In this document: piece after piece, positions 7,135-39,124 of the stretch
Layout: the number at the start of each line of letters is the position of its first letter
Position numbering within the stretch: position 1 is the stretch's first letter
Virus record (IMG/VR): IMGVR_UViG_3300047510_001118
Location: 62,001-126,000 of that record
Direction: 5' to 3' (one strand)
Length of the DNA: 64,000 nucleotides
The notes under the pieces: generated by a model
The model's input: only the letters and a program-made list of their open reading frames with translations
Databases searched by the model: none
What the model was told of the DNA's origin: nothing
Made by a program: the position numbers and the translations under genes

Positions 7135-7175
7135 TTATTTTTCCTCGATACGATATTTATCGTTAAATATTGCTT

Positions 7176-7784
7176 ATGAAACCTTTGTTGATGATACATG
7201 AAGTTCGAGAATGGATGTTTGATCTTCCATTAAATGACTACATCCTAACCTTTGATGACGGACTTTACAGCCAGTATTATTACAACGATCGTTTCAAACA
7301 ATTAACTACACAGAGAATATACTACATCAGTTCGGGTATTGTTAGCAGTGGTAAACAAAACTTAGATTTTCCAACCTGTGTAGATGCTCACATAAAAGCT
7401 CGCCAGGGCAACACAGAAGACTACATGACTGTTGCCCAGATCAAAGAACTGATGAAAGACCCAAACGTAATCATTGGCGCACACAGTCACAGTCATATTC
7501 GCTTGGATAACTTTACTAGTCTAGCAGAAAAGGTTAGATATATCAATGAAGATACAGAGCAGATGATACAGTGGTTTGAAACAAACTTAGGATTTAAACC
7601 CACACACTTCTGTTTCCCTTACAACGAAGATCCACACGGACTGTACAAAGGACTAGTTAAAAAATTTGGGATTACGAACTGCGTTGGATACGGTCGAACA
7701 CCAATCGAAACGCTTCGGCATAATGTAAGCCAACTTGATAGCCTCGATATTTTGCCAGCGTGGTCATTGCCTCGATACTCCTAG
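7176..7784 (+). CDS. polysaccharide deacetylase (NodB/CE4 family)
   Basis: LTFDDG, HSHSH, FCFPY motifs; ATG 7176 preferred over the 7170 TTG. Confidence 0.85.
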   Translation: MKPLLMIHEVREWMFDLPLNDYILTFDDGLYSQYYYNDRFKQLTTQRIYYISSGIVSSGKQNLDFPTCVDAHIKARQGNTEDYMTVAQIKELMKDPNVIIGAHSHSHIRLDNFTSLAEKVRYINEDTEQMIQWFETNLGFKPTHFCFPYNEDPHGLYKGLVKKFGITNCVGYGRTPIETLRHNVSQLDSLDILPAWSLPRYS

Positions 7785-8331
7785 CGTCCGGAAACTCGTA
7801 AGTTTCTGTTTGATACCTTGACAGCGCCTGTTTCTTAACTTCAATATAATCACTGATGTCTATATAGGTAGTAGGTTGAAACGCAGGTGTTAGTTGATTA
7901 AATGTCCAATCTGTGCTAGACGGTACTTCAAAGAAATAAAGTCGATTAACAGTGCTATCCGGTTTAGGACGACTGGCTATCATAACAGCGTCTGCTAATA
8001 CTCTGTGGTCGTGATTGATATCTGATATGTTATGTGTGTAAACTACTTCAGGTTTATGTTGAGCAAATAACTGTGTGAGTAAATGAGCAGTATCATTGAG
8101 CTCTAGACTTAGATCTTTGTTATTCCAAATTTTCCATTCTATTCCTAGATGCTCGCAGTTGGCTTTGAGAGCAAACACTCTGTCAGCGGCCACTTGTTCA
8201 AAGCCCGGACGTTCTCCGTTACACAAACAGAACAGTGTGACCTTATGTCCTTCTGCTACCATTCTAGCCATAGTACCATACGGACCATATGCTTCATCGT
8301 CAGGGTGTGCTAGGACGAACAATATGTTCAC
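7672..8331 (-). CDS. PIG-L/LmbE family N-acetylsugar deacetylase
   Basis: LAHPDDE and DINHDH motifs. Confidence 0.9.
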   Translation of the reverse strand: MNILFVLAHPDDEAYGPYGTMARMVAEGHKVTLFCLCNGERPGFEQVAADRVFALKANCEHLGIEWKIWNNKDLSLELNDTAHLLTQLFAQHKPEVVYTHNISDINHDHRVLADAVMIASRPKPDSTVNRLYFFEVPSSTDWTFNQLTPAFQPTTYIDISDYIEVKKQALSRYQTETYEFPDARSIEAMTTLAKYRGYQVGLHYAEAFRLVFDRIQRSS

Positions 8332-9200
8332 AGCATGTCCCTGATGATGTCGTCTACACTGTGTCTTGCTACAAATCCTGTCATGTACTTTACTTTGGTT
8401 AGGTCAGGTACTCTGCTGATAATGTCACTGTGCGGTGTAGGTATGTACTGTATCTTAGAACTGGATCCAGACAATTCAATTACACGTTCTGCTAGACGTT
8501 TGATAGTAATAACACTGTCACTGCCTATGTTAAAAATTTCACCATTAATATTTTCTATCTTGAGCATAGTATCTATAGCATCTTCGATATGGCAGAAACT
8601 TCTAACCTGGTTGCCGTCACCGTAGACTGTGAGGTCTTTACCAGACTTAGCCGCATCAACAAATCGTGGCAGTACCATGCCGTGGTCTCCTATCTGTCCT
8701 GGGCCCGTGACATTAAAGAATCTAATTATAGTGTAAGGGAATGTACCTGCGGAGATCATAAACTCTGTTGCTAGTTTAGCAGCCGCATATCCCCAACGCA
8801 GGTCAGTGGGCGGACCTATGTGTAGAGTACTGTCTTCGCTAAATGGACCATCACCATAGACTTCCGATGTGGAACTAAAGATTACTTTCTTTTGATACCT
8901 TTCAAACAAAGGTATCAAACGAGACATTAGTTCTATGTTATTATGTAATGTTGTTGTTGGATTGTTGACGATGTTAGCAACGCCTACAGAGCCTGCTAGG
9001 TAATATACTACATCAGCATCTAACAGCAGTTCATCTAATGGAGCATATCTAATATCTGTTTTAATAAATTTAACAGGGAATGTCGGAGCCTTTGAAGTTA
9101 TCAGTGAATCTACTATTGTAACATCGTGTCCGTCTTTAATTAATCGCTGTGCTAAGTGGGCGCCAATAAATCCAGCGCCACCTAATAGTAGATACTTCAT
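8328..9200 (-). CDS. NAD-dependent nucleotide-sugar epimerase/dehydratase
   Basis: GGAGFIG, SSTSEVYG, YAAAK, RFFNVTGP. Confidence 0.92.
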   Translation of the reverse strand: MKYLLLGGAGFIGAHLAQRLIKDGHDVTIVDSLITSKAPTFPVKFIKTDIRYAPLDELLLDADVVYYLAGSVGVANIVNNPTTTLHNNIELMSRLIPLFERYQKKVIFSSTSEVYGDGPFSEDSTLHIGPPTDLRWGYAAAKLATEFMISAGTFPYTIIRFFNVTGPGQIGDHGMVLPRFVDAAKSGKDLTVYGDGNQVRSFCHIEDAIDTMLKIENINGEIFNIGSDSVITIKRLAERVIELSGSSSKIQYIPTPHSDIISRVPDLTKVKYMTGFVARHSVDDIIRDML

Positions 9201-9985
9201 AGATTAACGATTTCTACCGACCTCTGGAACTCGCCTTCCATAGCAGTAAGTTTTGTAACGAATTCAGTCTGTTCTGCGGTCAATGGGGCAAAGGGAAAGA
9301 AATAAGCCTTTGTCGCGTCGTACTTCTCTGATTCGCTAGGGACCATTATGACACCAAATTTAGCAGTAGGATTCTCGTCAAATATCATTAAATCAACACA
9401 ACTGATTTGATCGTTCTTGATAAACAGCCGGTCATTTAAGTTACTTAATAATGGATTTACATCTCCGTTAAAAGTATTTTTAATCTTATCTAATGTTGTC
9501 TTATCAAGGCTATCTATAGTAATTTTTACTCCTGGATCGTCAAACTGAAGAAACTGCGGAGTTTCAATTAGAAATTTAGGAAATCCTCCAGGAGGATTTT
9601 GAATTAAAGATTTTATAGCATCGACACTATCAGCACCAGCAATGGCATTTTTTGATGTTAAGACAGACTTTAAAAAATTATCAACTTCAACTTGATCAGA
9701 GTTTTGAACATCGGCGGCTCGATTTTGAGCATCTTCTGTGTAAAATTGTTCTAGGAAATTTTTGTAATAGTACATTTTACCTTCGTGTAAACAGTAAAGG
9801 TCCCACACTCCCCAAACCATTTCGGGGTCAACAAAGGTATCAAATTCTGCTTCAAGAGCAAAGATTGTATTTGTTCTGCGGCAGCCTTTTTGAGACTCTG
9901 TATCGTATTCACAAAGTCTGTAAGGATTGTCTTTTGAATTTTCTACCTGTGTTGCTGGGATAGAAATTTGTTCATGTTCTGTCAT
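9197..9985 (-). CDS. hypothetical protein
   Basis: 262-aa ORF coupled within the operon. Confidence 0.7.
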   Translation of the reverse strand: MTEHEQISIPATQVENSKDNPYRLCEYDTESQKGCRRTNTIFALEAEFDTFVDPEMVWGVWDLYCLHEGKMYYYKNFLEQFYTEDAQNRAADVQNSDQVEVDNFLKSVLTSKNAIAGADSVDAIKSLIQNPPGGFPKFLIETPQFLQFDDPGVKITIDSLDKTTLDKIKNTFNGDVNPLLSNLNDRLFIKNDQISCVDLMIFDENPTAKFGVIMVPSESEKYDATKAYFFPFAPLTAEQTEFVTKLTAMEGEFQRSVEIVNL

Positions 9986-9994
9986 GGTTGTTCC

Positions 9995-10639
9995 TCAATA
10001 TTCTATAATATTAGCATCTAATACAGGATAGTCAATACCCAAATGATCAGCAATGGGCTCCATATTTGTGCCTTTTTTAACGTATAGTGTATTTACCCTA
10101 TTATCTTCGTTGTAAAGGTAGATAAAGAAAGGCTTAGAATCCTTGGGTTCAAAGTGCTTAAAATCAATTAATTTAATTTGATCTCCGTTTCTAGCCAAAT
10201 TGTATGTCATACTGTTATAGAACGGAGTAAGTGCCAACTGCTCGTGCTGAGCGTTCAAATACTGAAACTCTTGCGCTGAGATTGATTCCACAGGGTCACC
10301 TTCCCAATACTCATAGACTAGGAAACTGTCGTTGCTTTCTAATAGTTTTGGTAACAGTGTTCCTTGATAGGATTCAAGAAATGTATAGATATCTGGAGGA
10401 CTAGTTTGTTTTGTTAGATAGCAGTAATAGGGATCAACTTCTTTGGTATATGTATCAGCATTAGTATAGACAAAGTTCAAAGCACGTTTGTGAATGTACT
10501 TTTTATTGTTGTGTTCAAAAAAATAAAAATATATCTTACGTGTAAAAGGAGTATGATCTAAGCCGTAGATTCTTTTAAAATCGTCACGGGCTTCTTTGAT
10601 AAAACGAACTTTGCTGTTAGTAAGATATGTATTGGTCAT
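9995..10639 (-). CDS. hypothetical, possible kinase-like fold
   Basis: LPKLL...LVYEY..G and IKLIDF segments; the catalytic HxD is not evident. Confidence 0.45.
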   Translation of the reverse strand: MTNTYLTNSKVRFIKEARDDFKRIYGLDHTPFTRKIYFYFFEHNNKKYIHKRALNFVYTNADTYTKEVDPYYCYLTKQTSPPDIYTFLESYQGTLLPKLLESNDSFLVYEYWEGDPVESISAQEFQYLNAQHEQLALTPFYNSMTYNLARNGDQIKLIDFKHFEPKDSKPFFIYLYNEDNRVNTLYVKKGTNMEPIADHLGIDYPVLDANIIEY

Positions 10640-11690
10640 CGCGTACTAAATCCAAAGTTGAACAGTGGATGCCGCCGGCAAAGATTTCTCCGTGCTCTAA
10701 TTTAACAGGAATAACTGTGAAGCCATTCTTGTCTAGTATATCAGAAACTCCTACGGCACGTTCTGTAACTAACACAGTATTTTCGTCAACGCTTAGTACA
10801 TTAACGTCCATACCACGACTGCTGGCCAGTCTAATATCGATGTCAGTCATACCACGCACATCAATGTTTGCTGTTAGGTCTTTAGGATATAGATAAGTCC
10901 AGTTGCGAAACTTACTAGGCAATAAATCTTTAATGTTTGGATATAAAGGATTAACTAAGAATACTCCTGGACGTAAACAAATCAAACAACCGTCAATATG
11001 ATTGTCTGCTACATGTAACACATGGAAGTCTGTATCCGGATAAAAGCTCTTGATCCACTCATAGCCCAAGTATTGATTGTAACTGTTGATATTGACTATA
11101 CAGTCTTTACCCATGCGTAGGAACTGTGCGCCATCTACGGCCATTACATAGTTACTGGGAATATTTGTATAGTCACGACTATCTCCCCAGTGTCCTAGAT
11201 CGATAGTGTCTTCTGTTAACTCAGTGTGCGGAGCCTTAATCCATTGCCCGCCACGTCCTCGGTCCCAGGCACGACTATACACATCATGTAACAAAGTATT
11301 CTCATAATAACGATTGCGTACAAACGTAGGAGTTTCAATTAACTTGTTACCATATACCAGTGTTAGGTCTCTAACATTACTTGCTGAACTTAGTTCGCTA
11401 CGAAAACTAGGAGTAGTAAACGGAACAATCTTATCTAACACATCGGGTCTGTGTACTGTTACTCCTAGACCTTCTAGAGTCTTTGCCAATCCATCTAACT
11501 GTTCATTACGCTGGTCAATCAACTCCATGCTGACTGTATAGTTTTCAAATGGTGCTTCGTAGATGCGTTCGTCTAAGGCTTCTCTATAAAACTGTTTGAA
11601 TGTAATGTCGCTGATACGCTTGGCTAGTTTTAATTCTCTGCCAACTACAACTTCTTTTAACCGACCAAAACTTGTGTGTGAGTTAATCAC
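10617..11690 (-). CDS. amidinotransferase (StrB1/glycine amidinotransferase family)
   Basis: NSHTSFGRLKEVVVG, HIDG, GGIHCSTLDLVR. Confidence 0.9.
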   Translation of the reverse strand: MINSHTSFGRLKEVVVGRELKLAKRISDITFKQFYREALDERIYEAPFENYTVSMELIDQRNEQLDGLAKTLEGLGVTVHRPDVLDKIVPFTTPSFRSELSSASNVRDLTLVYGNKLIETPTFVRNRYYENTLLHDVYSRAWDRGRGGQWIKAPHTELTEDTIDLGHWGDSRDYTNIPSNYVMAVDGAQFLRMGKDCIVNINSYNQYLGYEWIKSFYPDTDFHVLHVADNHIDGCLICLRPGVFLVNPLYPNIKDLLPSKFRNWTYLYPKDLTANIDVRGMTDIDIRLASSRGMDVNVLSVDENTVLVTERAVGVSDILDKNGFTVIPVKLEHGEIFAGGIHCSTLDLVRDDQYISY

Positions 11691-12531
11691 TTAACTTCCT
11701 CATTCTATTAAAGTATTCTACTTTCTCTCTAACCTTATCGTACACAGGATCGTGTATAAGATGTTCGTGCCAAAAGTATACTGTTCTAAGTTCATCATCT
11801 GTGAACTCCTTTACTGGAGTATACCACTCGCCTATCTGATACTTTTGTATTGGCTGTACTGGCCACAGTTTGTTGTTATAGATCTTGTCCATAACGTATT
11901 CTTCTAAGTAGTAGTCTCCGCTGACCGCACGAACCTTCTCCCACTCGGGATCATGGTTAGTCATAGTATCTGTTAGCACATCAAAGAAGAACTTGTAGAA
12001 ACCACTGTCACGTCTGCTAATGGTAAAGCCCGTGTCAAACGGATTGCTCCATCCTTCTTTAACTGTGCGCTGTTGTGCTGTACAGTAGTCATCGTACTGT
12101 CCGCAGATTAATGTTTCACTGTTAACCAACTGTTCAGGCAAGGGCTTGATCAAATTCATGTCTAGGTCTATTTTGATTAAGACATCCTCTGTAAGTCTCT
12201 GCTCTAACAACATACCCACTAACGGAACATTTAAGAAACCGCTGATAAATGTTTCTGTGATAGGCTGATACTCTTCTATGTAAGTTACATTTAATTCTTT
12301 AAATTGTTCTTTTGTTTTGTCAGTTACAACGTTGTGCGTGGGACAAAAGGTATAGATAGCACAGTCTTTTAACCATCCCGCATTCTTACGCCAGTTTTCA
12401 AAGCACAGTGTGGCTTCGCTTTCAAACAAACGTCTAGTGCCAACAATGCCTTTCTGTTCGTTAAGGTTGTTAGCATCTCCTTCGATGGCTGTGATCAAGG
12501 CATACTTCATAGAGCATAGTCCTTCAAACAC
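11683..12531 (-). CDS. putative GT-A-type glycosyltransferase
   Basis: KIDLDM DxD-like motif after a hydrophobic strand; sugar-pathway context. Confidence 0.4.
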   Translation of the reverse strand: MFEGLCSMKYALITAIEGDANNLNEQKGIVGTRRLFESEATLCFENWRKNAGWLKDCAIYTFCPTHNVVTDKTKEQFKELNVTYIEEYQPITETFISGFLNVPLVGMLLEQRLTEDVLIKIDLDMNLIKPLPEQLVNSETLICGQYDDYCTAQQRTVKEGWSNPFDTGFTISRRDSGFYKFFFDVLTDTMTNHDPEWEKVRAVSGDYYLEEYVMDKIYNNKLWPVQPIQKYQIGEWYTPVKEFTDDELRTVYFWHEHLIHDPVYDKVREKVEYFNRMRKLSD

Positions 12532-13142
12532 GCAAACTTTGAAATGTCTGGATAGTCTTTGTGTGATCCGTTAGTGTAATGTTCGCTGAGTTGATTAAGC
12601 AACAGTGTGCCACGTGCGGCTTCGTCTGGACTCATGTACATATGATAGCCCATAATGATGCCTGTGTCTTCTGCTGTGGGTATACTACTGTCTCTGCCAT
12701 CATGTCGCATACGTTTTAACTTTTCATACATCTCTTTGTCATCTAATAGTATGGCTCCGCCTTTGCCTATGTTTAATCTTTTCTTTTGCTGAAAACTTAG
12801 ACACTGTACCTGTCCTGGTACATACATATTCTTTTCAAAGCCCACAGCATAGTCATAGACATTAGTATGTCCAATGCGATAGTGCTCACTCCATTGAATG
12901 TTTTCTAACCAAACATTGTAGCCGTAGTTGATTAAAGTCATCGGAACGCTGAGATAAGTCTGCTTGGGTAACGTTACCTTATGTCTTTTATGTCCGTAGT
13001 ATTCCATTGCTAATAAGATAGCATTGGTACAACGATCTACGGCTACAGCATAGGGAGCGCCTGTGTACTCACAGAGTCGTTGCTCAAATAGTTCTACAAA
13101 ATCGTTGTTGTTGTGATAATTTCGTTCAATGTCTTTAGACAT
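12507..13142 (-). CDS. short DegT/DnrJ/EryC1/StrS PLP aminotransferase
   Basis: FEQRLCEYTGAPYAVAVDRCT and LSFQQKKRLNIGKGGAI; only 211 aa. Confidence 0.85.
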   Translation of the reverse strand: MSKDIERNYHNNNDFVELFEQRLCEYTGAPYAVAVDRCTNAILLAMEYYGHKRHKVTLPKQTYLSVPMTLINYGYNVWLENIQWSEHYRIGHTNVYDYAVGFEKNMYVPGQVQCLSFQQKKRLNIGKGGAILLDDKEMYEKLKRMRHDGRDSSIPTAEDTGIIMGYHMYMSPDEAARGTLLLNQLSEHYTNGSHKDYPDISKFACLKDYAL

Positions 13143-14083
13143 ATCTTATCCTTCTTTAGTTCATCAAGCAAAGTAACTATGTTAGTTATCATAGATACTG
13201 GGCGCCACTCAACTTTCTTAATCAAAGCATTGCCAGTATCCAGTAGTTGTTCGTAATCGTAGACTAATTCTTCTTGTAGTTTTTCTCCAGGTCTACGGCC
13301 AATTATAAGTTGCGGATAGTTCTTGGGTACTAAGTCCATTATAGATTGTTCTTCGCCCATGTCTAAGATATAAGTTGCTTTGGCAAACTCTAAGTGAACA
13401 ACATTAATGATCAACGACACAGCATCCTGTACTGAAATAAAATAACGTTTCATTTCAGGATCTGTAATAGTAATAGGCAAGTTGTTTGCTACCTGCCATT
13501 CTAAGGTTTCAACAAAGGAACCCGACGATTTATAAACATTGCCAAATCTTACTATCTTTATTTCTGCGTCAGAAGTTCTAGCATATTGTTGTACAATACG
13601 TTCACACCATAGTTTAGTATATCCCATGTTGTTAGTAGGATTAACTGCTTTGTCGCTGGATATGTGTATCATGGACTTGACTTGGTCAGCATGATCACAT
13701 AAGTTAATAACAGATAGAATATTATTCTTAACAACTGAATAAAAGTTATTTTCGTCTTCTAGTGTGTCTACATGTTTGTAAGCCGCGGCATTAAAAACGT
13801 AATCTATTTGATACTTGTTGAATATTAAATCTACTAGTTTCTTATCGCTAACATCTCCGACTATACAATGTACGTTCTTAGTGCCAATGCCGCGTTGTAG
13901 TTTATAGATAGCGTACTCGCTGATGTCAACTGCTATGATAGTTTTTGCCTGTATCTGATTTACCAGTTCACTGCCAATAGTTCCACCGGCGCCTGTCACT
14001 AGCACAGTGCTGTCCTTAAAACTTACAGGCTGATGTATTGGCAGTTTATTCTTCATTTTAATAGAAATTCCATTACTAGACAC
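13094..14083 (-). CDS. CapD/PglF-like UDP-GlcNAc 4,6-dehydratase
   Basis: VTGAGGTIGSEL, AAAYKHV, ISSDKAVNP, MGYTK, RFGNV, GRRPGEKL; real start probably MKNKL. Confidence 0.9.
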   Translation of the reverse strand: MSSNGISIKMKNKLPIHQPVSFKDSTVLVTGAGGTIGSELVNQIQAKTIIAVDISEYAIYKLQRGIGTKNVHCIVGDVSDKKLVDLIFNKYQIDYVFNAAAYKHVDTLEDENNFYSVVKNNILSVINLCDHADQVKSMIHISSDKAVNPTNNMGYTKLWCERIVQQYARTSDAEIKIVRFGNVYKSSGSFVETLEWQVANNLPITITDPEMKRYFISVQDAVSLIINVVHLEFAKATYILDMGEEQSIMDLVPKNYPQLIIGRRPGEKLQEELVYDYEQLLDTGNALIKKVEWRPVSMITNIVTLLDELKKDKICLKTLNEIITTTTIL

Positions 14084-14709
14084 AATCGATGGTCGTCACT
14101 CTTGTGTTCTCCAACTGCGTGTGGAAGGTCAACTTTATGTATAACTAGATCTCCGGTTTTAACTGACACAGGAAATATTTCTTCCTTAGGTATGGATCGA
14201 GGATCTATACCCATCTCACAATATCTTCTAGTATTTTTTAAAATTAGTAAATCAGCACTGTTATCCGGTGCTTGTAGATAAAAGATTGCTACGACTTTTT
14301 TAGGTGAATTAGGATCGCTGTCATCGTCGTGCGTATGACAATTACCAAAGGATCCGTTATACATTACATTCATCCAGTTGATAGTTAACTGCGGTTTAGA
14401 TGTCAAATCTAAATCAAAGTGCTCTGCTACGGACTGTACTTTTTCTGATATCCATTCTAACAACATTTCTGAATTTTGAAAATCAAAAAAAGACCTTGCT
14501 GGAGTTTCAAAACTACTCCATACTAATGTTTCTCCGCTGACGCTATTTTTGTCTAGGTTACATGACTGATTATCTCTTATATTTGAATCTTTAAGTTCTT
14601 TTAAGGCAGAATCAATCCAGACTGGTTGTATATGTTTTCCGTCGTCGGCCAAGTTAAACTTGTAAATGTCATAGCCAAATGCTGATATTTTCTCTTTAAA
14701 ATTGTTCAT
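14053..14709 (-). CDS. putative 2OG-Fe(II) oxygenase
   Basis: HTHD...H...R pattern (CHTHD, LPHAV, HRL). Confidence 0.7.
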   Translation of the reverse strand: MNNFKEKISAFGYDIYKFNLADDGKHIQPVWIDSALKELKDSNIRDNQSCNLDKNSVSGETLVWSSFETPARSFFDFQNSEMLLEWISEKVQSVAEHFDLDLTSKPQLTINWMNVMYNGSFGNCHTHDDDSDPNSPKKVVAIFYLQAPDNSADLLILKNTRRYCEMGIDPRSIPKEEIFPVSVKTGDLVIHKVDLPHAVGEHKSDDHRLCLVMEFLLK

Positions 14710-16217
14710 TTGAAACTGTATCCTAGTTTATTATTTTTATAGTTTTCTAAAAATATAGGAAAATTTCTATAGTAAGGACCTAAAGACTTAGCACTTCCCC
14801 TTATTTTTTCTTTTAATGAAATAATTTTTCCATTATCATCTGGTAATATATTTGAAAGATAAAAAGGATCTAACCTTGACAAATCGTGCTGTCCTACTTT
14901 CCAAATATCGAAAAACTCTTTTACCCATTTATGAACTTGAATAACATTTAAATGATCATTTTCCCATGCTATGCTTCCAAAACTGCTGTGCTTAATCATA
15001 TCTTTAAATGCGGCTTTTACTTTTTCATCATCTGTTATATTCATCTCTCTGTAGCCATATTTTTTATAATCTAGTGATAACTCTGATGGCCTAAACTCAT
15101 CTGCTATTCGTTGTATCTCTAATGTATTAGCCATAGCCACTTGATCTGTCCAGTTTTTTCTAAACCAGTCACTTGTTTCATTTAAAGATTCAATAGTCTC
15201 ATACGGCAATCCACCGATCATTGCGATTATAGCACGATATAATCCATTGGATTTTTCTGTAAAGTATTTTTTAACTTCTATTAGTCCTTCTTTTACTTTA
15301 TCCGGATGCATGCCTTTGCCAATGACTTTTCCGCTTGCGTGGTTAAATGTTTCAACACCGTAAAAGTGTCCTAGAAACCCCATACGGATTAAATGATCCC
15401 AATCTTGTCTACGACTAATCAATAAGTCTGCTCTTATATAACCTGTAAAATATGGTTTGAATGGCAATGTTTCAACAACGTCAGCAAATTTAATAATTTT
15501 TTCTGTATGATCATTAAACGTTTCATCTGATACAATATAATTTTCAATTCCAAACTCGTCGTAATTTCTTAATAATTGATTTTTTACACTATCAGCATCT
15601 CTAGTATGATCCTCTTTAACTCCTAAGATAGGATAGTTACAGTACAAACATTTAAATTTACATCCCCTAGTAAACTCAATCATACCCCACTCGCCTGGTT
15701 GAATAAAATCTCGTTTTTCGTAAAAGATTGTTGCGTCTTTAAAAGGATAAGCCGGATACATATGAAGCGCATTAATAATTTTTGTATTGCCTTTAGATCT
15801 AACTACGTCAAATTTGGGTTTTTCGCCGTTACTAAACAAATATTTTAGAAGGGCATCTAAAGCATATTCTCCATACCCGGCAATATGATAATCAAAGTGT
15901 TTCATATCGGGTAGCATAGTTTGACCGCCGGACATTAACACAATATTGGGATATTTTTCTTTAATCCAAACACATAAATCTCGTATCTTATTTTCCGCAT
16001 CGGCATTGTTAAACAAAAAACTAAAACCAAAAAATTTCATGTTTTCGTCAACTCTGCTATCTACTAATTCTTTTAGTTCTTCTAATTCCCAGTAATCAAC
16101 AAAGTCTATAACTTCAACATCCCAGTCTTGTTTTCTAAGGTGAGTAGCGATTCTGTGAGCGCCAGAACTTCTATACATTGTATAATTGTTAACGGTAAAA
16201 AATAAACTTTTGTTCAT
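14706..16217 (-). CDS. B12-binding-domain radical SAM enzyme (class B-like)
   Basis: N-terminal Rossmann-like domain with GYGEY; EFTRGCKFKCLYC; DETFN; GVETF. Confidence 0.85.
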   Translation of the reverse strand: MNKSLFFTVNNYTMYRSSGAHRIATHLRKQDWDVEVIDFVDYWELEELKELVDSRVDENMKFFGFSFLFNNADAENKIRDLCVWIKEKYPNIVLMSGGQTMLPDMKHFDYHIAGYGEYALDALLKYLFSNGEKPKFDVVRSKGNTKIINALHMYPAYPFKDATIFYEKRDFIQPGEWGMIEFTRGCKFKCLYCNYPILGVKEDHTRDADSVKNQLLRNYDEFGIENYIVSDETFNDHTEKIIKFADVVETLPFKPYFTGYIRADLLISRRQDWDHLIRMGFLGHFYGVETFNHASGKVIGKGMHPDKVKEGLIEVKKYFTEKSNGLYRAIIAMIGGLPYETIESLNETSDWFRKNWTDQVAMANTLEIQRIADEFRPSELSLDYKKYGYREMNITDDEKVKAAFKDMIKHSSFGSIAWENDHLNVIQVHKWVKEFFDIWKVGQHDLSRLDPFYLSNILPDDNGKIISLKEKIRGSAKSLGPYYRNFPIFLENYKNNKLGYSFK

Positions 16218-17125
16218 ATAATGTATCTTAAGTCTTTCTTATCACATAGCTCTATTACAGCACGATCACAATACTTACAGACTTCGTACTGCATACTTAG
16301 AATCTTTTCGTAGTCGCCATCCCATTCTTTGCCTTTGCTGGCTTCTAAGAAGAGATAACAGGGATATACTTTGCCGTTTATGTCTACCTGCTGACTCTTG
16401 TTTTCCCAACTCATACAGTAAGCCTTACCTTTGACAGGACTAGCATATTTGGCCCTAGCAAACTTATCCATGTACATGTAATCATCGATCTTTTTAGGAT
16501 TAGGACGCAGTTTAATTAAGTTTGTTTTGTCCACATAGTTGGCTTCATCTTTCTGTAAGAAAGTCTCAGTCCAATACACATGACTAAACTCACTAACCAT
16601 TTCTTTAAATTTAGGACTGTCAAAGTCCTCCGAGTTGTAGTAGAACCTGATACACTGGGCATAGTCATTTTTACTAGGTCCACGGAAAGCGCGAGCATTT
16701 TCTAATATCCTTTTTAAATTTGTTCCTGTACGATAAATTTCGTGTAGTTCTTGTGTGCTACCGCAGATACTAAAATATACTTTGTCGTTGGCATTCATCA
16801 GTGTGGCTAGCTCTGCCCACCATTCTGGCTTGTGCGTATCTCCGTTAGTACAGATTTCAATCTTTAATCCTCGATCCTTCATGTACTTGACTAAAGGAAA
16901 GAAATATTTGTACATGGTAGGTTCTGATATAGTACCAACAAGACGTATCCATTCTAAATCAGGGAAGGTTTCTAACTGTGCTATAACTTCATCCAAGGGT
17001 CTAACTTTATCTTCGGGATAGTGTTCTTTAAATGCTGTGTAGTTACGATAACACAGGCCGCACTTGGCATTACAGTATGTTGTAAGTTCTAACTCTAGGT
17101 CAATGACCTTAGGCATCTTCAGCAT
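16214..17125 (-). CDS. radical SAM protein (paralogue A1)
   Basis: CNAKCGLC, SEPT, TNG; C-terminal Cys cluster. Confidence 0.9.
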   Translation of the reverse strand: MLKMPKVIDLELELTTYCNAKCGLCYRNYTAFKEHYPEDKVRPLDEVIAQLETFPDLEWIRLVGTISEPTMYKYFFPLVKYMKDRGLKIEICTNGDTHKPEWWAELATLMNANDKVYFSICGSTQELHEIYRTGTNLKRILENARAFRGPSKNDYAQCIRFYYNSEDFDSPKFKEMVSEFSHVYWTETFLQKDEANYVDKTNLIKLRPNPKKIDDYMYMDKFARAKYASPVKGKAYCMSWENKSQQVDINGKVYPCYLFLEASKGKEWDGDYEKILSMQYEVCKYCDRAVIELCDKKDLRYII

Positions 17126-18048
17126 ACAAAGTCCAATCCCATTTTATCAATAAAGGTACGTGTGCGCTTCTCACATAGGAAACAATCTGGAAACTTAAAG
17201 GATAGGATATCACCGTAGTCCATGTCATCCTTGTCTGCTGGAAAGTAGTCTTGCTCGTTCTCAGCGTGAGTATAGCAGGCACTGACCTGTCCCCATTGAT
17301 TGATATAAATCTTTTTAGATTGCATACTACGACATTGTATGGTATATTGTTTTCCATCATTAGGCTCTGGGCGATTCTTAAACAACAACTTGATAGTTTG
17401 CTCCCGGGTCTTAACTGGACGAATGCCTAGTTCCACTTCTTTATTGTAGACGTTTACTCTACGCACACCTTCTGTTTCAACTTTCATTACACGACTAAAT
17501 TGATCAAAGATTGCTTTCATCGCAGGGCTTTCTCTATCCTCAGCATTGTACTCAAATCGTATATGTTGTATCCAATCGTTCTTGCGACCATTTTTACGAA
17601 AAGCAGCCGCATTATCTAATATTTGTTGTAGGTCACTGCCCACACGATACTTGGCATGTATTTCCTGTGTACTTCCGCAAACAGTAAAACAACACATACA
17701 CTTTTCAGGTACGATACTGCCTAACTGTTCCCACCATTCAGTATCGCGTGTATTGCCGTTGGTAAAGATTTCATAATAGATGTCACGACTGTTTAGGTAT
17801 TCAATAAACTTAATAAAGTCTTTGTACATTGTAGGTTCACTGACTACACCCGCAACAAAGAAACGTTTAAGTCCCGTGTATTGATCTAATTGTTTAATAA
17901 TAGTATCAATGTCACGTACATTCTTTTCTACTAGATGATTTGCGTGTTGATAGTTACGAGTACATAGTGGGCAGGAAAGGTTACAGACTCCTGTTAAGTC
18001 CATTTCCATTTCTTCCACTTCACTCTTTTTCATCGTAACCTGCGTCAT
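17119..18048 (-). CDS. radical SAM protein (paralogue A2)
   Basis: CNLSCPLC, SEPT, TNG; C-terminal Cys cluster. Confidence 0.9.
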   Translation of the reverse strand: MTQVTMKKSEVEEMEMDLTGVCNLSCPLCTRNYQHANHLVEKNVRDIDTIIKQLDQYTGLKRFFVAGVVSEPTMYKDFIKFIEYLNSRDIYYEIFTNGNTRDTEWWEQLGSIVPEKCMCCFTVCGSTQEIHAKYRVGSDLQQILDNAAAFRKNGRKNDWIQHIRFEYNAEDRESPAMKAIFDQFSRVMKVETEGVRRVNVYNKEVELGIRPVKTREQTIKLLFKNRPEPNDGKQYTIQCRSMQSKKIYINQWGQVSACYTHAENEQDYFPADKDDMDYGDILSFKFPDCFLCEKRTRTFIDKMGLDFVC

Positions 18049-18962
18049 CCCATTCGCTCCATACCATTACTTTCTAACATTGTCTTAGTCATGCTTTCGC
18101 ATTCGTAGCAGTAACGATTATTAAATTCAAATATATCGCTGTAGTCGTTGTGATCAAACGTCCTATTGTCATATATTCTATGTAGGAAGCAAGGATGCTC
18201 TCCTCCAAAATTATCAACAAACAAAAATTTTAATTCAAAACTCTTACATTTCATTGAACACTTAGTTCCGCTGTCATATCGTTTAAGGACAGCATTACGA
18301 ATTACATTGTATTTTTCACCCAACTTGCCGGCCATCTTTATATCGTTGTTAGGATCTTTAATTATATTAAACCGTTCTTGATAAGGAGCAGACTCGCAGA
18401 CATACAAATGATTAAATTCTTTAATAATCTTTTTCATGTCATCTGATTCTAGATTATCTTTGTTGTATTCAAAACGGATCAACTGTATCCAGTCGCTGGT
18501 ACATCCCGATTTACGAAATGCTTCAGCATGTCTTAACACTTGTTCTAAACTAGAATTGACACGATATTTTTCGTGTAACTCTTGTGTTGTGCCACAGACT
18601 GTAAACAGCACACGGTCTCTATCTTTAACTAGAGTTCCTAGTTCTTCCCACCACTCTTCTTTGTGTGTGTTAGCATTAGTGTATAGATCAAAACAAATGT
18701 TTCTAGAATTGAGGTATTTTATTAACTCTAAGAATTCTTTGTACATTGTAGGTTCACTGACTGCTCCACTTAGACAAGTGTATTTTAAATTTGGAAAACT
18801 ATCTAGGTGAGCAATCCATTCCTCTAAAGGACGGATGTGCTTGACATTAAGATGTTTAGCATTTTCATAACTTCTAGAACAAAGTGGGCAATCAAGATTA
18901 CAAGTACCCGTAAGCTCAAGTTCCAATTCTAGTATTTCTTCGCGTTTTAATCCAATAGTCAT
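18045..18962 (-). CDS. radical SAM protein (paralogue A3)
   Basis: CNLDCPLC, SEPT; C-terminal Cys cluster. Confidence 0.9.
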   Translation of the reverse strand: MTIGLKREEILELELELTGTCNLDCPLCSRSYENAKHLNVKHIRPLEEWIAHLDSFPNLKYTCLSGAVSEPTMYKEFLELIKYLNSRNICFDLYTNANTHKEEWWEELGTLVKDRDRVLFTVCGTTQELHEKYRVNSSLEQVLRHAEAFRKSGCTSDWIQLIRFEYNKDNLESDDMKKIIKEFNHLYVCESAPYQERFNIIKDPNNDIKMAGKLGEKYNVIRNAVLKRYDSGTKCSMKCKSFELKFLFVDNFGGEHPCFLHRIYDNRTFDHNDYSDIFEFNNRYCYECESMTKTMLESNGMERMG

Positions 18963-19582
18963 AGGTATATTATACTGTCAAAGTCTTTCTCTTTAAACAC
19001 TCTCATTTTTGATTCTTCGCTCATTCTGTTATGGTGTTTGGCCAGCATGGCGTGTTTTAATTTGGTAGATAGTATTACTCCATTAATACCTTCTGGATTA
19101 GTAGCCGCAACAAGATGGAACTGTATCTGTGGGTATTTATTGAGGAACGCTTCTAGATTTTTAAAATTGTTATCTGTTACTATTAATAGATACTGTAAAT
19201 TTAATTCTGAATCAATTATTATATCGTCCTCCGGATCTAAGTTCTCGCTACAGTGATATAGGACAGTATCAAAACGAGGCAACAGATCACGATAGCGTTT
19301 GATAAACAGTCCGTTAGTGTTGATGCTAGGACGGCAACCTTTCTTCTCTAGTTCGTCTAGGATGTATTCAATGTCTTTGCGTTTCATACTACCCACTTCA
19401 CCGCCACTGAGTGTTACATTATATCCAGGAATAACTTTATCTAACTTGGCTTTTACTTCATCCATGGTCAGTGTAGGACGATTGTGTGTATCAACACAGC
19501 AATAGTCACAGTGCCAGTTACATACCCATGTAACAACTAATTCAATTTCTCGTTCTTGTGCGTGAATTGCCATTAGTGCCAC
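18959..19582 (-). CDS. short radical SAM protein (paralogue B1)
   Basis: CNWHCDYC, SGGE, NTNG. Confidence 0.88.
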   Translation of the reverse strand: MALMAIHAQEREIELVVTWVCNWHCDYCCVDTHNRPTLTMDEVKAKLDKVIPGYNVTLSGGEVGSMKRKDIEYILDELEKKGCRPSINTNGLFIKRYRDLLPRFDTVLYHCSENLDPEDDIIIDSELNLQYLLIVTDNNFKNLEAFLNKYPQIQFHLVAATNPEGINGVILSTKLKHAMLAKHHNRMSEESKMRVFKEKDFDSIIYL

Positions 19583-20151
19583 CTTGCCACAACTGTGATG
19601 AATTCTTGTAATGATCCTGGATGTACTTTATCTCCGTGTTCATTAAAGAAGTCCATCATTAAGTTTAAGTTAATCTTCTTTTGACTACGCACATCTGGTA
19701 ACAACAGAAACTTAATGTGCGGATAACGTCTAATCATTTCATGTATGCTTCCATCTAAGAAGTTTGTGTTTGTAACTACAAGTCCGTAGGCTACATGATC
19801 TAACTGTAAGTCCGGAAACTCTATGTCGTCGGGCAAGTATTCAACACAATGATAATGTATCTTACCAAACTCGTGTACCAACGGCATATGACGTTTAAAG
19901 AACAGTCCGTTGGTTAATAAATCAATTACACAGTCTTTATTTTTCAAGATGCCAATTATTTCTTCTAACTGTTCACGCTTTAACAGTCCAGGTTCACCAC
20001 CACCAAAGGTAACTTCTGTGCCTGGTTCGATGGCATGTACTCTACGCAGAACTTCTTCGTAAGGCAACTCTGGACGATTGTGTGTGTCTGCTACACAATA
20101 GTCACAGTGCCAATTACACTTATAAGTTAAAGGAAGTTCTATTTCTTTCAT
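19573..20151 (-). CDS. short radical SAM protein (paralogue B2)
   Basis: CNWHCDYC, GGGEP, LTNG. Confidence 0.88.
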   Translation of the reverse strand: MKEIELPLTYKCNWHCDYCVADTHNRPELPYEEVLRRVHAIEPGTEVTFGGGEPGLLKREQLEEIIGILKNKDCVIDLLTNGLFFKRHMPLVHEFGKIHYHCVEYLPDDIEFPDLQLDHVAYGLVVTNTNFLDGSIHEMIRRYPHIKFLLLPDVRSQKKINLNLMMDFFNEHGDKVHPGSLQEFITVVARWH

Positions 20152-29528: not shown

Positions 29529-29574
29529 CTCTTTTAACATATTTGTGGAATATTTATTGGTTAAATACTATACT

Positions 29575-39087: not shown

Positions 39088-39089
39088 GG

Positions 39090-39118
39090 TTGACAGCCCA
39101 GGTCTAGTATTGTATAAT
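39090..39118 (+). promoter_or_regulatory. sigma70 promoter (leaderless start at 39125)
   Basis: TTGACA-17-TATAAT, ATG 7 nt later. Confidence 0.8.
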
Positions 39119-39124
39119 ACTAGC

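What the first reader, a model, noticed from the sequence alone, without database searches (positions are those of the whole stretch)
8328..14083. Phage pathway with the logic of guanidino-sugar synthesis
Seen: one operon with a CapD-like 4,6-dehydratase, a DegT aminotransferase, a DxD GT-like protein, an amidinotransferase, a kinase-like ORF, an epimerase and a PIG-L deacetylase; a UDP-sugar dehydrogenase heads the island. Established: dehydratase plus DegT makes 4-amino-6-deoxy sugars, and aminotransferase plus amidinotransferase (StsC/StrB1) builds the guanidino groups of streptidine. Inference: the phage makes a cationic guanidino sugar to decorate virion proteins, DNA or the host surface, a chemistry I do not know from phages.
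Basis: partly seen in the sequence, partly recalled or inferred. Interest (0 to 1): 0.78.

Follow-up and report, generated by a model that had tools for sequence, protein, structure and literature searches.

The report
Phage amino-sugar amidination and radical-SAM cassette

Summary
**Observation: confirmed, with corrections.**
- 10617-11690 is a full-length amidinotransferase. It matches StrB1, HsvA, AGAT and SxtG at about 1e-31, and its Asp-His-Cys triad is invariant.
- 13094-14083 is a soluble PglF/CapD-type 4,6-dehydratase.
- The DegT (12507-13142) is a conserved 211-aa miniature that keeps the PLP lysine.
- The "epimerase" (8328-9200) is closest to UDP-glucuronate decarboxylase (UXS1, 5e-39).
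- The "kinase" (9995-10639) has only a weak kinase-like fold.
- The PIG-L deacetylase, a NodB deacetylase and a mini UDP-sugar dehydrogenase are real.

- The operon is the 3' arm of a cassette spanning 7170-29494.
- That cassette also holds 11 intact radical-SAM genes, two GT-B glycosyltransferases and a Cys-rich protein with a tail-fibre chaperone domain.
- It recurs in about 15 viral contigs.
- It is syntenic in Peredibacter and Halobacteriovorax chromosomes.
- Part of it occurs in Campylobacter Firehammerviruses.

**Support for the interpretation.**
- 24 of 27 amidinotransferase loci also carry a DegT gene. That includes DPANN archaea, where a different kinase sits beside the amidinotransferase. 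This supports the aminotransferase-to-amidinotransferase logic.
- The conserved sugar route is UGDH, then a UXS/ArnA-like enzyme, then an ArnB-like DegT, which points to a 4-amino-pentose. The CapD dehydratase is accessory.
- No cassette protein is predicted to span a membrane, so the acceptor is probably cytoplasmic, and I think most likely a protein.

The product and the target remain inference.

The parts
28757..29494 (-). Mini UDP-sugar 6-dehydrogenase (245 aa). It has the NAD-binding and central domains but no C-terminal UDP-binding domain.
   Evidence: Pfam UDPG_MGDP_dh central and N-terminal domains are above cut-off. TIGR03026 gives 118 bits. The same short form (244-264 aa) occurs in L035, L036, L038 and L039, with the Rossmann glycines, K155/N159/K165 and the catalytic C216 conserved.
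27735..28760 (-). Radical-SAM/SPASM enzyme, PapB/QhpD-like (rSAM_a)
   Evidence: Pfam Radical_SAM. NCBIfam PapB 1e-32 and QhpD 7e-25, both below their cut-offs. CxxxCxxC is intact.
27521..27751 (-). 76-aa acidic helical ORF between the two SPASM enzymes
   Evidence: ORF list. An 80-aa ORF sits in the same place in the Peredibacter locus L012. It matches no family.
26352..27524 (-). Radical-SAM/SPASM enzyme (rSAM_b), like PapB and the CXXX-repeat peptide maturases
   Evidence: PapB 1.4e-22; TIGR04115 9e-18; below cut-offs. Motif intact.
25562..26350 (-). Cys-rich fibre-like protein (u262a). It has an N-terminal Cys motif, a Ser/Thr-rich middle (21%), four CxCxxx repeats, then a Peptidase_S74 self-cleaving chaperone domain. 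I take it as the candidate substrate.
   Evidence: Sequence. S74 matches: phrog_6121 5.6e-13 and Pfam 0.0016. Halobacteriovorax homologues end exactly at the predicted cleavage site, and the Cys columns are invariant. It travels with the cassette in G002, G003, L038, L039 and L012-14.
24943..25560 (-). Conserved 205-aa protein of unknown function (u205)
   Evidence: No Pfam or NCBIfam match. phrog_25260, unknown function. 45-57% identical in L012-14 and L039.
24152..24940 (-). GT-B-like protein (u262b), a paralogue of u298
   Evidence: hhalign against the u298 family gives probability 95.3%, E 2.3e-8, over 239 columns.
23268..24164 (-). Compact GT-B (GT4-like) glycosyltransferase (u298)
16214..23271 (-). 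Eight radical-SAM genes: SPASM-type 22408-23271, rSAM_c 21429-22454, d 20148-20903, e 19573-20151, f 18959-19582, and the paralogue trio g/h/i 18045-18962, 17119-18048 and 16214-17125. There is also a 210-aa Rossmann-like ORF at 20800-21432.
   Evidence: Pfam Radical_SAM is above cut-off for each. CxxxCxxC is intact in all. The g/h/i trio and rSAM_c recur in nearly all loci, including CP220. NCBIfam gives only sub-threshold generic matches.
14706..16217 (-). B12-binding radical-SAM enzyme, probably a methyltransferase. Accessory and swapped between close relatives.
   Evidence: Pfam B12-binding plus Radical_SAM. It is 49% identical in L003, where its neighbours are 88-97% identical.
14053..14709 (-). 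2OG-Fe(II) oxygenase (accessory)
   Evidence: Pfam PF13759 at 33.4 bits against a cut-off of 27; phrog_81.
13094..14083 (-). Soluble PglF/CapD-type UDP-HexNAc 4,6-dehydratase (accessory)
   Evidence: It is present only in the window's lineage, L010 and L034.
12507..13142 (-). Miniature DegT-family PLP enzyme (211 aa)
   Evidence: Pfam 75 bits. The PLP lysine K121, S116/F117, G128/G129, D97-x-A99 and T39 are conserved in 15 sequences. Loops and the whole C-terminal domain are missing. A full-length ArnB-like DegT is in the Peredibacter cassette, between kin and PIG-L.
11683..12531 (-). GT-A (GT8-like) glycosyltransferase with a DxD motif
   Evidence: phrog_23758. 35% identical to CP220 gp088, which is annotated with the nucleotide-diphospho-sugar transferase fold. 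Language-model features 0.96-0.97. D122/D124 and H255/H257 are conserved. It is next to, or within three genes of, the amidinotransferase in all phage and bacterial loci that carry one.
10617..11690 (-). L-arginine-type amidinotransferase
   Evidence: There are 413 homologues at E<=1e-10 in metagenomes.
9995..10639 (-). Small protein with a protein-kinase-like fold (kin); catalytic competence unclear
   Evidence: The family has only 30 representative clusters. K47/K51 and D159 are conserved, but there is no HxD motif.
9197..9985 (-). Acidic 262-aa protein of unknown function (u262c), fast-evolving and swapped between relatives
   Evidence: No family match. It is 26-50% identical where its neighbours are 85-97% identical. 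A metatranscriptome contig replaces it with 777 unrelated bases.
8328..9200 (-). UXS/ArnA-type SDR, probably a UDP-glucuronate decarboxylase
   Evidence: Best solved relative UXS1 at 4.9e-39, against ArnA and GalE at about 1e-17 to 1e-29. The STSE and YxxxK motifs are conserved in 14 sequences.
7672..8331 (-). PIG-L family de-N-acetylase
   Evidence: Pfam 69.8 bits. The AHPDDE motif and H109 are conserved in 12 sequences.
7170..7784 (+). NodB-type (polysaccharide deacetylase family) enzyme, convergent with PIG-L
   Evidence: Pfam PF01522 at 30.2 bits against a cut-off of 23.1. D29/D30 and H105/H109 are conserved in 13 sequences. It holds the same position in nearly all loci.

Best explanation
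The region is the sugar-tailoring arm of a mobile 22-kb cassette (window 7170-29494). The cassette runs entirely in the cytoplasm.

**Proposed route**
1. The mini-UGDH makes UDP-glucuronate.
2. The UXS/ArnA-like SDR oxidatively decarboxylates it to a UDP-4-keto-pentose.
3. The miniature DegT transaminates this to a UDP-4-amino-4-deoxy-pentose.
4. In this phage lineage, an added PglF-like dehydratase can also feed the DegT a 4-keto-6-deoxy-HexNAc.
5. The amidinotransferase moves the amidino group of L-arginine onto a sugar amine, giving a guanidino sugar. That amine could be the DegT-made one, or one exposed by the PIG-L or NodB deacetylase. A phosphorylation by the kinase-like protein may come first.
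6. The GT8-like GT-A and the two GT-B enzymes attach the sugar(s) to a soluble acceptor.
7. The radical-SAM enzymes tailor the sugars further. The two PapB-like SPASM enzymes would act on the Cys-rich tail of the acceptor.

The acceptor I think most likely is the cassette's own Cys-rich, Ser/Thr-rich fibre-like protein (25562-26350). In phages that lack it, another virion fibre protein would take its place.

**Shown**: the family assignments, intact catalytic motifs, conserved synteny, co-occurrence, and the absence of membrane proteins.

**Inferred**: every substrate, the order of steps, the guanidino product and the acceptor.
For: **Enzyme identities and motifs**.

**Amidinotransferase-DegT linkage**
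- 24 of 27 loci, across three domains of hosts.
- Archaeal loci carry a DegT-NUDIX fusion and a thymidylate-kinase-like kinase beside the amidinotransferase.
- Two unrelated kinase types in the same neighbourhood argue that a phosphorylation step belongs to the pathway.

**UGDH, UXS-like SDR and DegT**
- They recur together without CapD.
- The bacterial cassette's DegT is closest to ArnB at 1e-80.
- The bacteria have only a housekeeping UGDH elsewhere in the genome, whereas several phage copies carry a mini one inside the cassette.

**Glycosyltransferases**
- No cassette protein has a transmembrane-like segment.

**Fibre-like protein**
- It is co-inherited with the cassette from phage to Peredibacter and Halobacteriovorax.
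- It has an S74 tail-fibre chaperone domain.

**Location and variation**
- In this phage, the Campylobacter phages and L031 the cassette lies beside structural, baseplate or fibre genes.
- Three genes (rSAM_g, B12-rSAM, u262c) are replaced by other alleles between near-identical cassettes. This is the pattern expected of a structure under diversifying selection.
Against: - No product, substrate or acceptor has been measured.
- The closest solved amidinotransferases use a phospho-aminocyclitol, glycine, a polyamine or a toxin intermediate. None uses a nucleotide sugar, and the phage enzyme is equally distant from all of them.
- Campylobacter phages carry the amidinotransferase, GT-A, GT-B and radical-SAM genes but no DegT, SDR, PIG-L or u262a in the locus.
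- Archaeal loci have no recognisable homologue of the cassette's GT-A or GT-B genes.
- The mini-DegT lacks a whole domain.
- The kinase-like protein lacks the canonical catalytic Asp.
- The UXS-type enzyme may finish the reaction to UDP-xylose rather than release the keto sugar.
- The complex prediction of the SPASM enzymes with u262a gave no answer.
- Lying next to tail genes may only reflect a hot spot for insertions.
Confidence: 0.45

Rival explanations
1. The cassette makes a free small molecule, an aminoglycoside-, aminocyclitol- or nucleoside-like guanidino compound. It would act as an antibiotic, a signal or an anti-defence metabolite during infection and would not be attached to a macromolecule.
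For: - The gene set mirrors aminoglycoside logic: a DegT-type aminotransferase, an APH/choline-kinase-like fold, an amidinotransferase, a PIG-L deacetylase, twitch/SPASM radical-SAM enzymes and glycosyltransferases.
- Archaeal loci keep only the amidinotransferase, DegT-NUDIX, kinase and radical-SAM genes, with no recognisable homologue of the cassette's glycosyltransferases.
- The authors of the cyanophage S-SCSM2R paper read their three genes as antibiotic synthesis genes (PMC12801897).
Against: - The Pfam scans of the island ORFs found no cyclitol-forming enzyme (DOI synthase, inositol-phosphate synthase or inositol dehydrogenase), exporter or self-resistance gene. No island protein has a membrane segment.
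- A dedicated fibre-like protein and two peptide-type SPASM maturases are co-inherited with the cassette.
- Lytic jumbo phages have little obvious use for a secreted antibiotic.
Confidence: 0.2
2. The amidinotransferase is functionally independent of the sugar genes. It amidinates a non-sugar amine: a polyamine as HsvA does, an amino acid such as Lys or Orn, or a lysine side chain of a protein.
For: - HsvA and AGAT are as close as StrB1.
- In Campylobacter phages the enzyme occurs with no DegT or nucleotide-sugar enzyme nearby.
- A second amidinotransferase of cyanophage S-SCSM2R was detected in purified virions (PMC12801897).
Against: - The gene overlaps its neighbours in the operon.
- It is next to or near a GT-A in all phage and bacterial loci that carry one, and a DegT is present in 24 of 27 loci across domains.
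Confidence: 0.15
3. The cassette remodels the host cell surface (LPS, capsule or S-layer glycan) with a cationic sugar, as Ara4N does on lipid A. This would block superinfection or change the cell envelope.
For: - There is an Arn-like set: UGDH, a UXS/ArnA-like SDR, an ArnB-like DegT, a GT-A and a NodB-type deacylase.
- LPS-type gene clusters are known in large cyanomyoviruses (from my own knowledge).
Against: - There is no polyprenyl-phosphate transferase, flippase, polymerase, ligase or ArnT-like protein, and no transmembrane segment in any cassette protein.
- There is no formyltransferase.
Confidence: 0.1
4. The cassette hypermodifies phage DNA, putting a glycosylated, amino- or guanidino-bearing group on a base to evade restriction.
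For: - Phage DNA glucosyltransferases are GT-B enzymes, and PLP and radical-SAM enzymes take part in thymidine hypermodification (from my own knowledge).
- The genome has a ThyA-family gene.
Against: - The whole cassette sits in bacterial chromosomes between cytochrome bc, FtsK and rpsB genes.
- Its core occurs in archaeal genomes.
- The Pfam scans of the island ORFs found no base-exchange enzyme, hydroxymethylase, DNA kinase or pyrophosphorylase. The genome has no TGT/DpdA.
- A protein substrate candidate is part of the cassette.
Confidence: 0.07

Closest known systems
Radical-SAM plus 'possible glycine amidinotransferase' module of Campylobacter phages CP220/CPt10 (Firehammervirus; Timms et al. 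2010, PMC2853527)
   Same: - Homologous amidinotransferase (43% identity).
- Three paralogous radical-SAM genes of the g/h/i type, plus a SPASM-type one.
- GT-A proteins (35% identity) and u298-type GT-B proteins.
- It lies beside baseplate and tail-fibre genes.
- It was described as an interchangeable module of unknown function.
   Different: - The Campylobacter module has no DegT, UGDH, UXS-like SDR, PIG-L, NodB, kinase-like gene or Cys-rich fibre protein in the locus.
- The window's version is about twice as large.
Streptidine branch of streptomycin biosynthesis (StsC aminotransferase, inosamine kinase, StrB1 amidinotransferase)
   Same: - Same three enzyme classes in one operon.
- StrB1 is the top solved match, and the catalytic triad and Arg-binding positions align.
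- A kinase is linked to the amidinotransferase in most loci.
   Different: - No cyclitol-forming enzymes.
- The context is nucleotide-sugar enzymes (UGDH, UXS-like, PglF-like) and three glycosyltransferases.
- The kinase-like protein is an orphan family without the canonical catalytic loop.
Arn pathway for 4-amino-4-deoxy-L-arabinose (Ugd, ArnA, ArnB, ArnC, ArnD, ArnT)
   Same: - It has a UGDH, a UXS/ArnA-type decarboxylase-like SDR, a GT-A and a NodB-type deacylase.
- The DegT of the bacterial cassette is closest to ArnB.
   Different: - No formyltransferase domain and no membrane enzymes.
- It adds an amidinotransferase, a PIG-L and 11 radical-SAM enzymes.
PglF-PglE (bacillosamine) and PseB-PseC first steps
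   Same: 13094-14083 is closest to PglF (6e-49) and is followed directly by a DegT gene.
   Different: - It has no acetyltransferase.
- The dehydratase lacks the membrane domain.
- The pair is accessory within the cassette family.
- PseB and PseC equivalog scores are far below their cut-offs.
Radical-SAM/SPASM peptide maturases (PapB ranthipeptide, QhpD, CXXX-repeat systems)
   Same: Two SPASM enzymes flank a small acidic ORF and lie just upstream of a protein with a CxCxxx-repeat tail.
   Different: - The putative substrate is a protein of about 185 aa with a tail-fibre chaperone domain, not a short leader-core peptide.
- The similarities are below the curated cut-offs, and no cross-link has been shown.
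Virion protein glycosylation in mycobacteriophages (from my own knowledge, not checked here)
   Same: Phage-encoded soluble glycosyltransferases next to structural genes, acting in the cytoplasm.
   Different: Those systems have no amidinotransferase, radical-SAM enzymes or dedicated sugar-nucleotide tailoring on this scale.

Membership tests
Amidinotransferase (pentein fold; StrB1/AGAT/HsvA/SxtG) | Full-length sequence homology to solved amidinotransferases | tested here: met
   phmmer against the PDB gives 4.7e-31 to 6e-29 over residues 2-356.
Amidinotransferase (pentein fold; StrB1/AGAT/HsvA/SxtG) | Catalytic Cys-His-Asp triad | tested here: met
   D186, H231 and C343 (in GGIHCSTLD) align with the StrB1 triad. 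They are invariant or at least 90% conserved in 10 and in 29 sequences.
Amidinotransferase (pentein fold; StrB1/AGAT/HsvA/SxtG) | Identity of the amidino acceptor | not testable with these tools
   The enzyme is equally distant from enzymes with four different acceptors. This needs an enzyme assay.
PglF/CapD UDP-HexNAc 4,6-dehydratase | Polysacc_synt_2 domain with the Asp-Lys catalytic motif | tested here: met
   Pfam 240 bits. SSDKAV aligns with PglF.
PglF/CapD UDP-HexNAc 4,6-dehydratase | Score above the curated equivalog cut-off (PseB, FnlA) | tested here: not met
   PseB 126.5 bits against 407.75; FnlA 91 against 730. It is a family member, but not one of the named equivalogs.
DegT/DnrJ/EryC1 sugar aminotransferase | Family profile above cut-off, with the PLP-binding lysine | tested here: met
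   75.2 bits against 19.8. K121 aligns with the Schiff-base lysine and is conserved in 15 sequences.
DegT/DnrJ/EryC1 sugar aminotransferase | Two-domain architecture of about 360-400 aa | tested here: not met
   It is 211 aa. Two loops of the large domain and the whole C-terminal domain are absent. The same short form (195-242 aa) occurs in more than 10 loci. It works like a DegT at best; activity is untested.
UDP-glucuronate decarboxylase (UXS/ArnA C-terminal type) | Closest solved relatives and the T/S-E plus YxxxK catalytic set | tested here: met
   UXS1 at 4.9e-39 is the top match. S110/S112/E113 and Y138/K142 are conserved.
UDP-glucuronate decarboxylase (UXS/ArnA C-terminal type) | Curated equivalog score; release of the 4-keto-pentose versus reduction to UDP-xylose | tested here: inconclusive
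   NF008872 93.8 bits against 294; GalE 99.8 against 262. The product cannot be read from the sequence.
Protein-kinase-like (APH/choline kinase/RIO) phosphotransferase | Kinase fold | tested here: inconclusive
Protein-kinase-like (APH/choline kinase/RIO) phosphotransferase | Catalytic-loop HxD...N motif | tested here: not met
   Only K47/K51, P97, F106 and D159 are near-invariant in 29 sequences, and there is no conserved HxD. HMMER links the family to no kinase family.
GT-A (GT8-like) glycosyltransferase | DxD metal/nucleotide-sugar motif and GT-A fold | tested here: met
   D122-L-D124 and H255/H257 are at least 90% conserved in 22 sequences. The fold is supported only by language-model features (0.96-0.97) and by the SSF53448 annotation of the CP220 homologue. 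No structure was predicted.
Streptidine-type aminocyclitol pathway | A cyclitol-forming or cyclitol-oxidising enzyme in the cluster | tested here: not met
   No such family turned up in the Pfam scans of the island ORFs. The resemblance is in logic, not in membership.
Arn (Ara4N) pathway | Formyltransferase, the undecaprenyl-phosphate transferase ArnC and the membrane transferase ArnT | tested here: not met
   No formyltransferase domain was found, and no protein has a transmembrane-like segment.
Phage virion glycosylation system | A glycan on a virion protein | not testable with these tools
   Only context is available: soluble glycosyltransferases, an S74 fibre-like protein and neighbouring structural genes.

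The most novel reading that the evidence does not exclude
A horizontally mobile cassette, shared by freshwater jumbo phages, marine and other viral contigs and predatory bacteria (Peredibacter, Halobacteriovorax), builds a guanidino-pentose: an amidinated relative of 4-amino-4-deoxy-arabinose. It attaches this sugar, along with radical-SAM thioether cross-links, to a small trimeric fibre protein. If so, this would be the first guanidino sugar I know of in a glycoconjugate and, to my knowledge, the first radical-SAM-tailored virion or adhesin fibre. Allele swapping of three cassette genes would tune the structure in an arms race over adsorption.
Probability: 0.15. Interest if true: 0.9.

Novelty: new variant of a known kind. 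Interest (0 to 1): 0.68.

Why it matters
All 11 strong radical-SAM genes of this 278-kb phage sit in this one island. The cassette's amidinotransferase has more than 400 metagenomic homologues, and its core (amidinotransferase, DegT, kinase, radical SAM) reaches from phages to bacteria and DPANN archaea. Even so, the literature searches I ran found no assigned function, only two papers that noticed some of the genes.

If the model holds, it would add three things:
- a new cationic sugar chemistry, the amidination of an amino sugar;
- a set of miniaturised enzymes (a 211-aa DegT and a 245-aa UGDH) of interest for enzymology;
- a new way for phages and predatory bacteria to decorate fibres.

It is directly testable, because Peredibacter, Halobacteriovorax and Campylobacter phage CP220 can be cultured.

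Tried and rejected
- **Megablast of the region against phage records**: no match.
- **Stop-codon recoding** in the GC-rich 38-54 kb stretch that has few long ORFs: rejected. No alternative code lengthens the ORFs.
- **DegT split by a frameshift into the next ORF**: rejected. The next ORF is a family of its own (phrog_23758), and the short DegT is conserved at the same length elsewhere.
- **Truncated UGDH as a pseudogene**: rejected. The same short form with its catalytic residues is conserved in four other loci.
- **Profile searches of the kinase-like and u298 families against PDB sequences**: nothing significant. A marginal GNAT-like hit (E 0.6) was dropped after the fold results.
- **Complex prediction of the two SPASM enzymes with u262a**: no answer, so I do not use it as evidence.
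- **Exact-sequence look-up of an archaeal homologue**: not on record.
- **First structure job**: I removed those rows and sent them nowhere else.
- **7-deazaguanine DNA modification**: no TGT/DpdA in the genome.
- **Cyanophage identity**: not supported. There is no psbA, and the capsid is nearest to PA5oct/Phosso-type jumbo phages.
- **Promoter and terminator scans**: no more hits than in shuffled sequence.
- **Literature searches** for a described function or for guanidino nucleotide sugars: nothing relevant.

Full report
**What the window is.**
- The window is bases 62001-126000 of a single 278-kb viral contig with GC 0.39, estimated to be about 75% complete.
- It is a T4-core jumbo myovirus. 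It has a Gp23-type capsid gene whose nearest cultured relatives are Sinorhizobium phage Phosso (75%), Vibrio phage 2.275.O and the Pseudomonas PA5oct group.
- It has no psbA.
- It comes from freshwater, and near-identical DNA occurs in many lake and pond metagenomes.

**Checking the observation.**
- *Dehydratase (13094-14083).* This is a Polysacc_synt_2 protein (3.9e-71). It is closest to PglF of Campylobacter (6e-49) and keeps the Asp-Lys motif. It consists of the soluble catalytic domain only.
- *DegT (12507-13142).* It scores 75 bits, but it is only 211 aa.
  - Aligned with eight relatives and a full-length DegT, it keeps the PLP lysine (K121), the SF..K..GxGG block, the D-x-A motif and the N-terminal Thr motif.
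  - Two loops and the entire C-terminal domain are gone.
  - It is not a broken gene. The same short form (195-242 aa) is conserved in more than ten loci, and the next ORF is a separate family.
- *"DxD GT-like" ORF (11683-12531).* It belongs to phrog_23758 and is 35% identical to CP220 gp088, which is annotated with the nucleotide-diphospho-sugar transferase fold. It looks like GT8/Nucleotid_trans proteins to a language model (0.96-0.97), and its DxD motif and a C-terminal His pair are conserved.
- *Amidinotransferase (10617-11690).* This assignment is beyond doubt.
  - It gives full-length matches to StrB1, HsvA, AGAT and SxtG at 5e-31 to 6e-29.
  - Its C-terminal GGIHCSTLD aligns to the catalytic Cys motif.
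  - The Asp-His-Cys triad is invariant.
  - The Asp and Arg positions that, by my recollection of the StrB1 structure, hold the arginine donor (D108, R127) are also invariant.
- *"Kinase-like" ORF (9995-10639).* This is the weakest call.
  - A confident AF2 model (pLDDT 91.8) matches only kinases: APH(2'')-Ia, choline kinase, Rio2 and Ark1.
  - The family has only 30 representative clusters among 1.8 billion proteins, and it conserves two Lys and one Asp but no HxD loop.
- *"Epimerase" (8328-9200).* It is much closer to human UDP-glucuronate decarboxylase UXS1 (4.9e-39) than to GalE or ArnA, and it carries the STSE and YxxxK signatures.
- *PIG-L (7672-8331).* It is genuine, and its AHPDDE motif is conserved.
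- *NodB deacetylase (7170-7784, plus strand).* A convergent NodB-type deacetylase that was not listed.
- *Dehydrogenase at the head of the island (28757-29494).* It is a 245-aa short UGDH that lacks the UDP-binding domain. It keeps the catalytic Cys, and the same short form is conserved in four other loci.

**What lies around it.** Between the dehydrogenase and the sugar genes lie 11 radical-SAM genes, all with an intact CxxxCxxC motif. They are all the strong radical-SAM matches in the genome. The stretch also contains:
- u262b (24152-24940), its paralogue (hhalign 95.3%).
- Two PapB/QhpD-like SPASM enzymes, which flank a 76-aa acidic ORF.
- u262a (25562-26350), which lies just downstream of those SPASM enzymes.
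  - It has a conserved N-terminal Cys motif, a Ser/Thr-rich middle and four CxCxxx repeats.
  - It ends with a Peptidase_S74 self-cleaving tail-fibre chaperone domain.
  - In Halobacteriovorax the homologue ends exactly at the predicted cleavage site, so the Cys-rich repeat is the mature C-terminus.
- No island protein with a transmembrane-like segment.

**The cassette elsewhere.**
- *Viral contigs.* The whole set, in nearly the same order, occurs in about 15 viral contigs, with amidinotransferase identities of 45-97%.
- *Bacterial chromosomes.* It also occurs in the chromosomes of Peredibacter and two Halobacteriovorax (59-61%).
  - There it lies between cytochrome bc, FtsK and rpsB genes, with no sign of a prophage in the flanks examined.
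  - A full-length DegT sits between the kinase-like gene and PIG-L in the Peredibacter cassette. Its closest solved relative is ArnB (1e-80).
- *A Sulfurovum contig.* It has the radical-SAM, amidinotransferase, mini-DegT, GT-A and kinase-like genes in a row.
- *Campylobacter Firehammerviruses.* They carry a reduced version next to baseplate and tail-fibre genes: amidinotransferase at 43%, the three paralogous radical-SAM genes, a SPASM-type one, GT-A and GT-B.
- *Cyanophage S-SCSM2R.* It has the mini-DegT (41%), a radical-SAM gene, glycosyltransferases, 2OG oxygenases and a distant amidinotransferase.
- *DPANN archaea.* They have the amidinotransferase (33-35%) flanked by a radical-SAM gene, a thymidylate-kinase-like kinase, a DegT (in one case fused to NUDIX) and a B12-radical-SAM gene.
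- *Counts.* Over 27 loci, a DegT-family gene is within 10 kb in 24. The exceptions are two Campylobacter phages and one short contig.
- *Variable parts.* CapD occurs only in the window's lineage, L010 and L034. The UXS-like SDR is in 13 of the 18 non-archaeal loci, and the mini-UGDH is in the window and four of the viral loci whose 10-kb flanks reach it.

**Reading.**
The two genes stay together across phages, bacteria and archaea. A kinase of one of two unrelated folds usually accompanies them, as in the streptidine pathway.
- The particular sugar proposed is probably not the conserved one. The recurrent feedstock enzymes are UGDH and a UXS/ArnA-type decarboxylase, and the ancestral-looking DegT is ArnB-like. 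That points to a 4-amino-4-deoxy-pentose.
- The PglF-like dehydratase, the B12-radical-SAM enzyme and the 2OG oxygenase are lineage-specific additions.
- There are three soluble glycosyltransferases and no membrane machinery, so the sugar is most simply transferred to a cytoplasmic acceptor.
- A fibre-like, Ser/Thr- and Cys-rich protein is inherited with the cassette, together with peptide-type SPASM maturases. The cassette also sits among structural genes in three phage lineages. I therefore favour a decorated fibre protein as the acceptor, with overall confidence 0.45 in the model and about 0.3 in that particular acceptor.
- The rivals, in order of my confidence, are a free aminoglycoside-like metabolite, an amidinotransferase acting on a non-sugar amine, host-surface remodelling, and DNA hypermodification. 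Each is set out with its evidence in the Rival explanations section.

**Diversification.**
- Between the window and L003/L006 most cassette genes are 82-97% identical, but rSAM_g (32%), the B12-radical-SAM gene (49%) and u262c (49%) have been replaced by distant alleles.
- A riverine metatranscriptome contig joins the SDR and kinase-like genes around 777 unrelated bases in place of u262c.
- The same RNA libraries hold contigs about 90% identical to the kinase-like gene, amidinotransferase and GT-A (on one 2,062-nt contig), the mini-DegT and CapD. This is compatible with expression of relatives but does not prove it, since DNA may be present in such libraries.

**Prior knowledge.**
- Timms et al. 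(PMC2853527) reported five radical-SAM genes plus a putative glycine amidinotransferase as an exchangeable module in CP220 and CPt10, and they suggested a metabolic benefit.
- The S-SCSM2R paper (PMC12801897) called its mini-DegT, radical-SAM gene and amidinotransferase "antibiotic synthesis genes". It also detected another amidinotransferase in purified virions.
- I found no paper that assigns a function or describes a guanidino nucleotide sugar.

**Verdict.**
- The region is a new, larger variant of an uncharacterised and widespread cassette built from known enzyme families.
- The product is unknown.
- The cassette is directly testable in culturable carriers.

Noticed in passing
window 25562-26350 (-): A small protein with an N-terminal Cys motif, four CxCxxx repeats and a C-terminal Peptidase_S74 self-cleaving chaperone domain. 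It lies just downstream of two PapB-like SPASM radical-SAM genes. Its homologues in Halobacteriovorax end exactly at the predicted cleavage site.
   Followed up: partly
window 29545-30777 (+): A phage-encoded 5-aminolevulinate synthase (TIGR01821 569 bits against a cut-off of 339), immediately upstream of the island and divergent from it. By my own knowledge this type of ALA synthase is typical of Alphaproteobacteria, which may hint at the host.
   Followed up: no
window 9197-9985, 14706-16217 and 18045-18962 (-): Three cassette genes (u262c, the B12-radical-SAM gene and rSAM_g) are only 32-49% identical to those of L003/L006, while their neighbours are 82-97% identical. This looks like allelic replacement inside an otherwise near-identical cassette. 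A metatranscriptome contig also swaps u262c.
   Followed up: partly
window 12507-13142 and 28757-29494 (-): Two miniaturised enzymes: a 211-aa DegT without its C-terminal domain and a 245-aa UGDH without its UDP-binding domain. Both are conserved at these sizes in several viral loci and keep their catalytic residues.
   Followed up: partly
window 51957-52206 (+): A cluster of three tRNA genes: Met-CAT, Leu-TAA and Arg-TCT.
   Followed up: no
window about 38000-54000: A stretch with higher GC (0.46-0.49, against 0.39 for the genome) and mostly short plus-strand ORFs. No alternative genetic code lengthens them.
   Followed up: partly
L019:11706-13856 (+), Woesearchaeota MAG: A DegT aminotransferase fused to a NUDIX domain. 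It lies next to a thymidylate-kinase-like kinase, the amidinotransferase and a B12-radical-SAM gene.
   Followed up: no
L038:13588-14304 (+): An ORF with a Tad6 (Thoeris inhibitor) domain (5.5e-26) is inserted inside the cassette of another viral contig, between the mini-DegT and the SDR.
   Followed up: no
L012:17331-18401 (+), Peredibacter: Just downstream of the bacterial cassette there is a protein with a type IV pilin-like N-terminal methylation motif and a Peptidase_S74 chaperone domain.
   Followed up: no
L031:13086-13403 (+): A small Fe-S cluster assembly (IscA/HesB-type) gene follows the cassette in another viral contig. Giant ORFs of 1515 aa and of at least 1966 aa come after it.
   Followed up: no
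L030:8995-10772 (+), phage CP220: A second u298-type GT-B gene (gp184) is paired with another radical-SAM gene (gp183), far from the main module. This suggests that the GT-B and a radical-SAM enzyme work as a unit.
   Followed up: no
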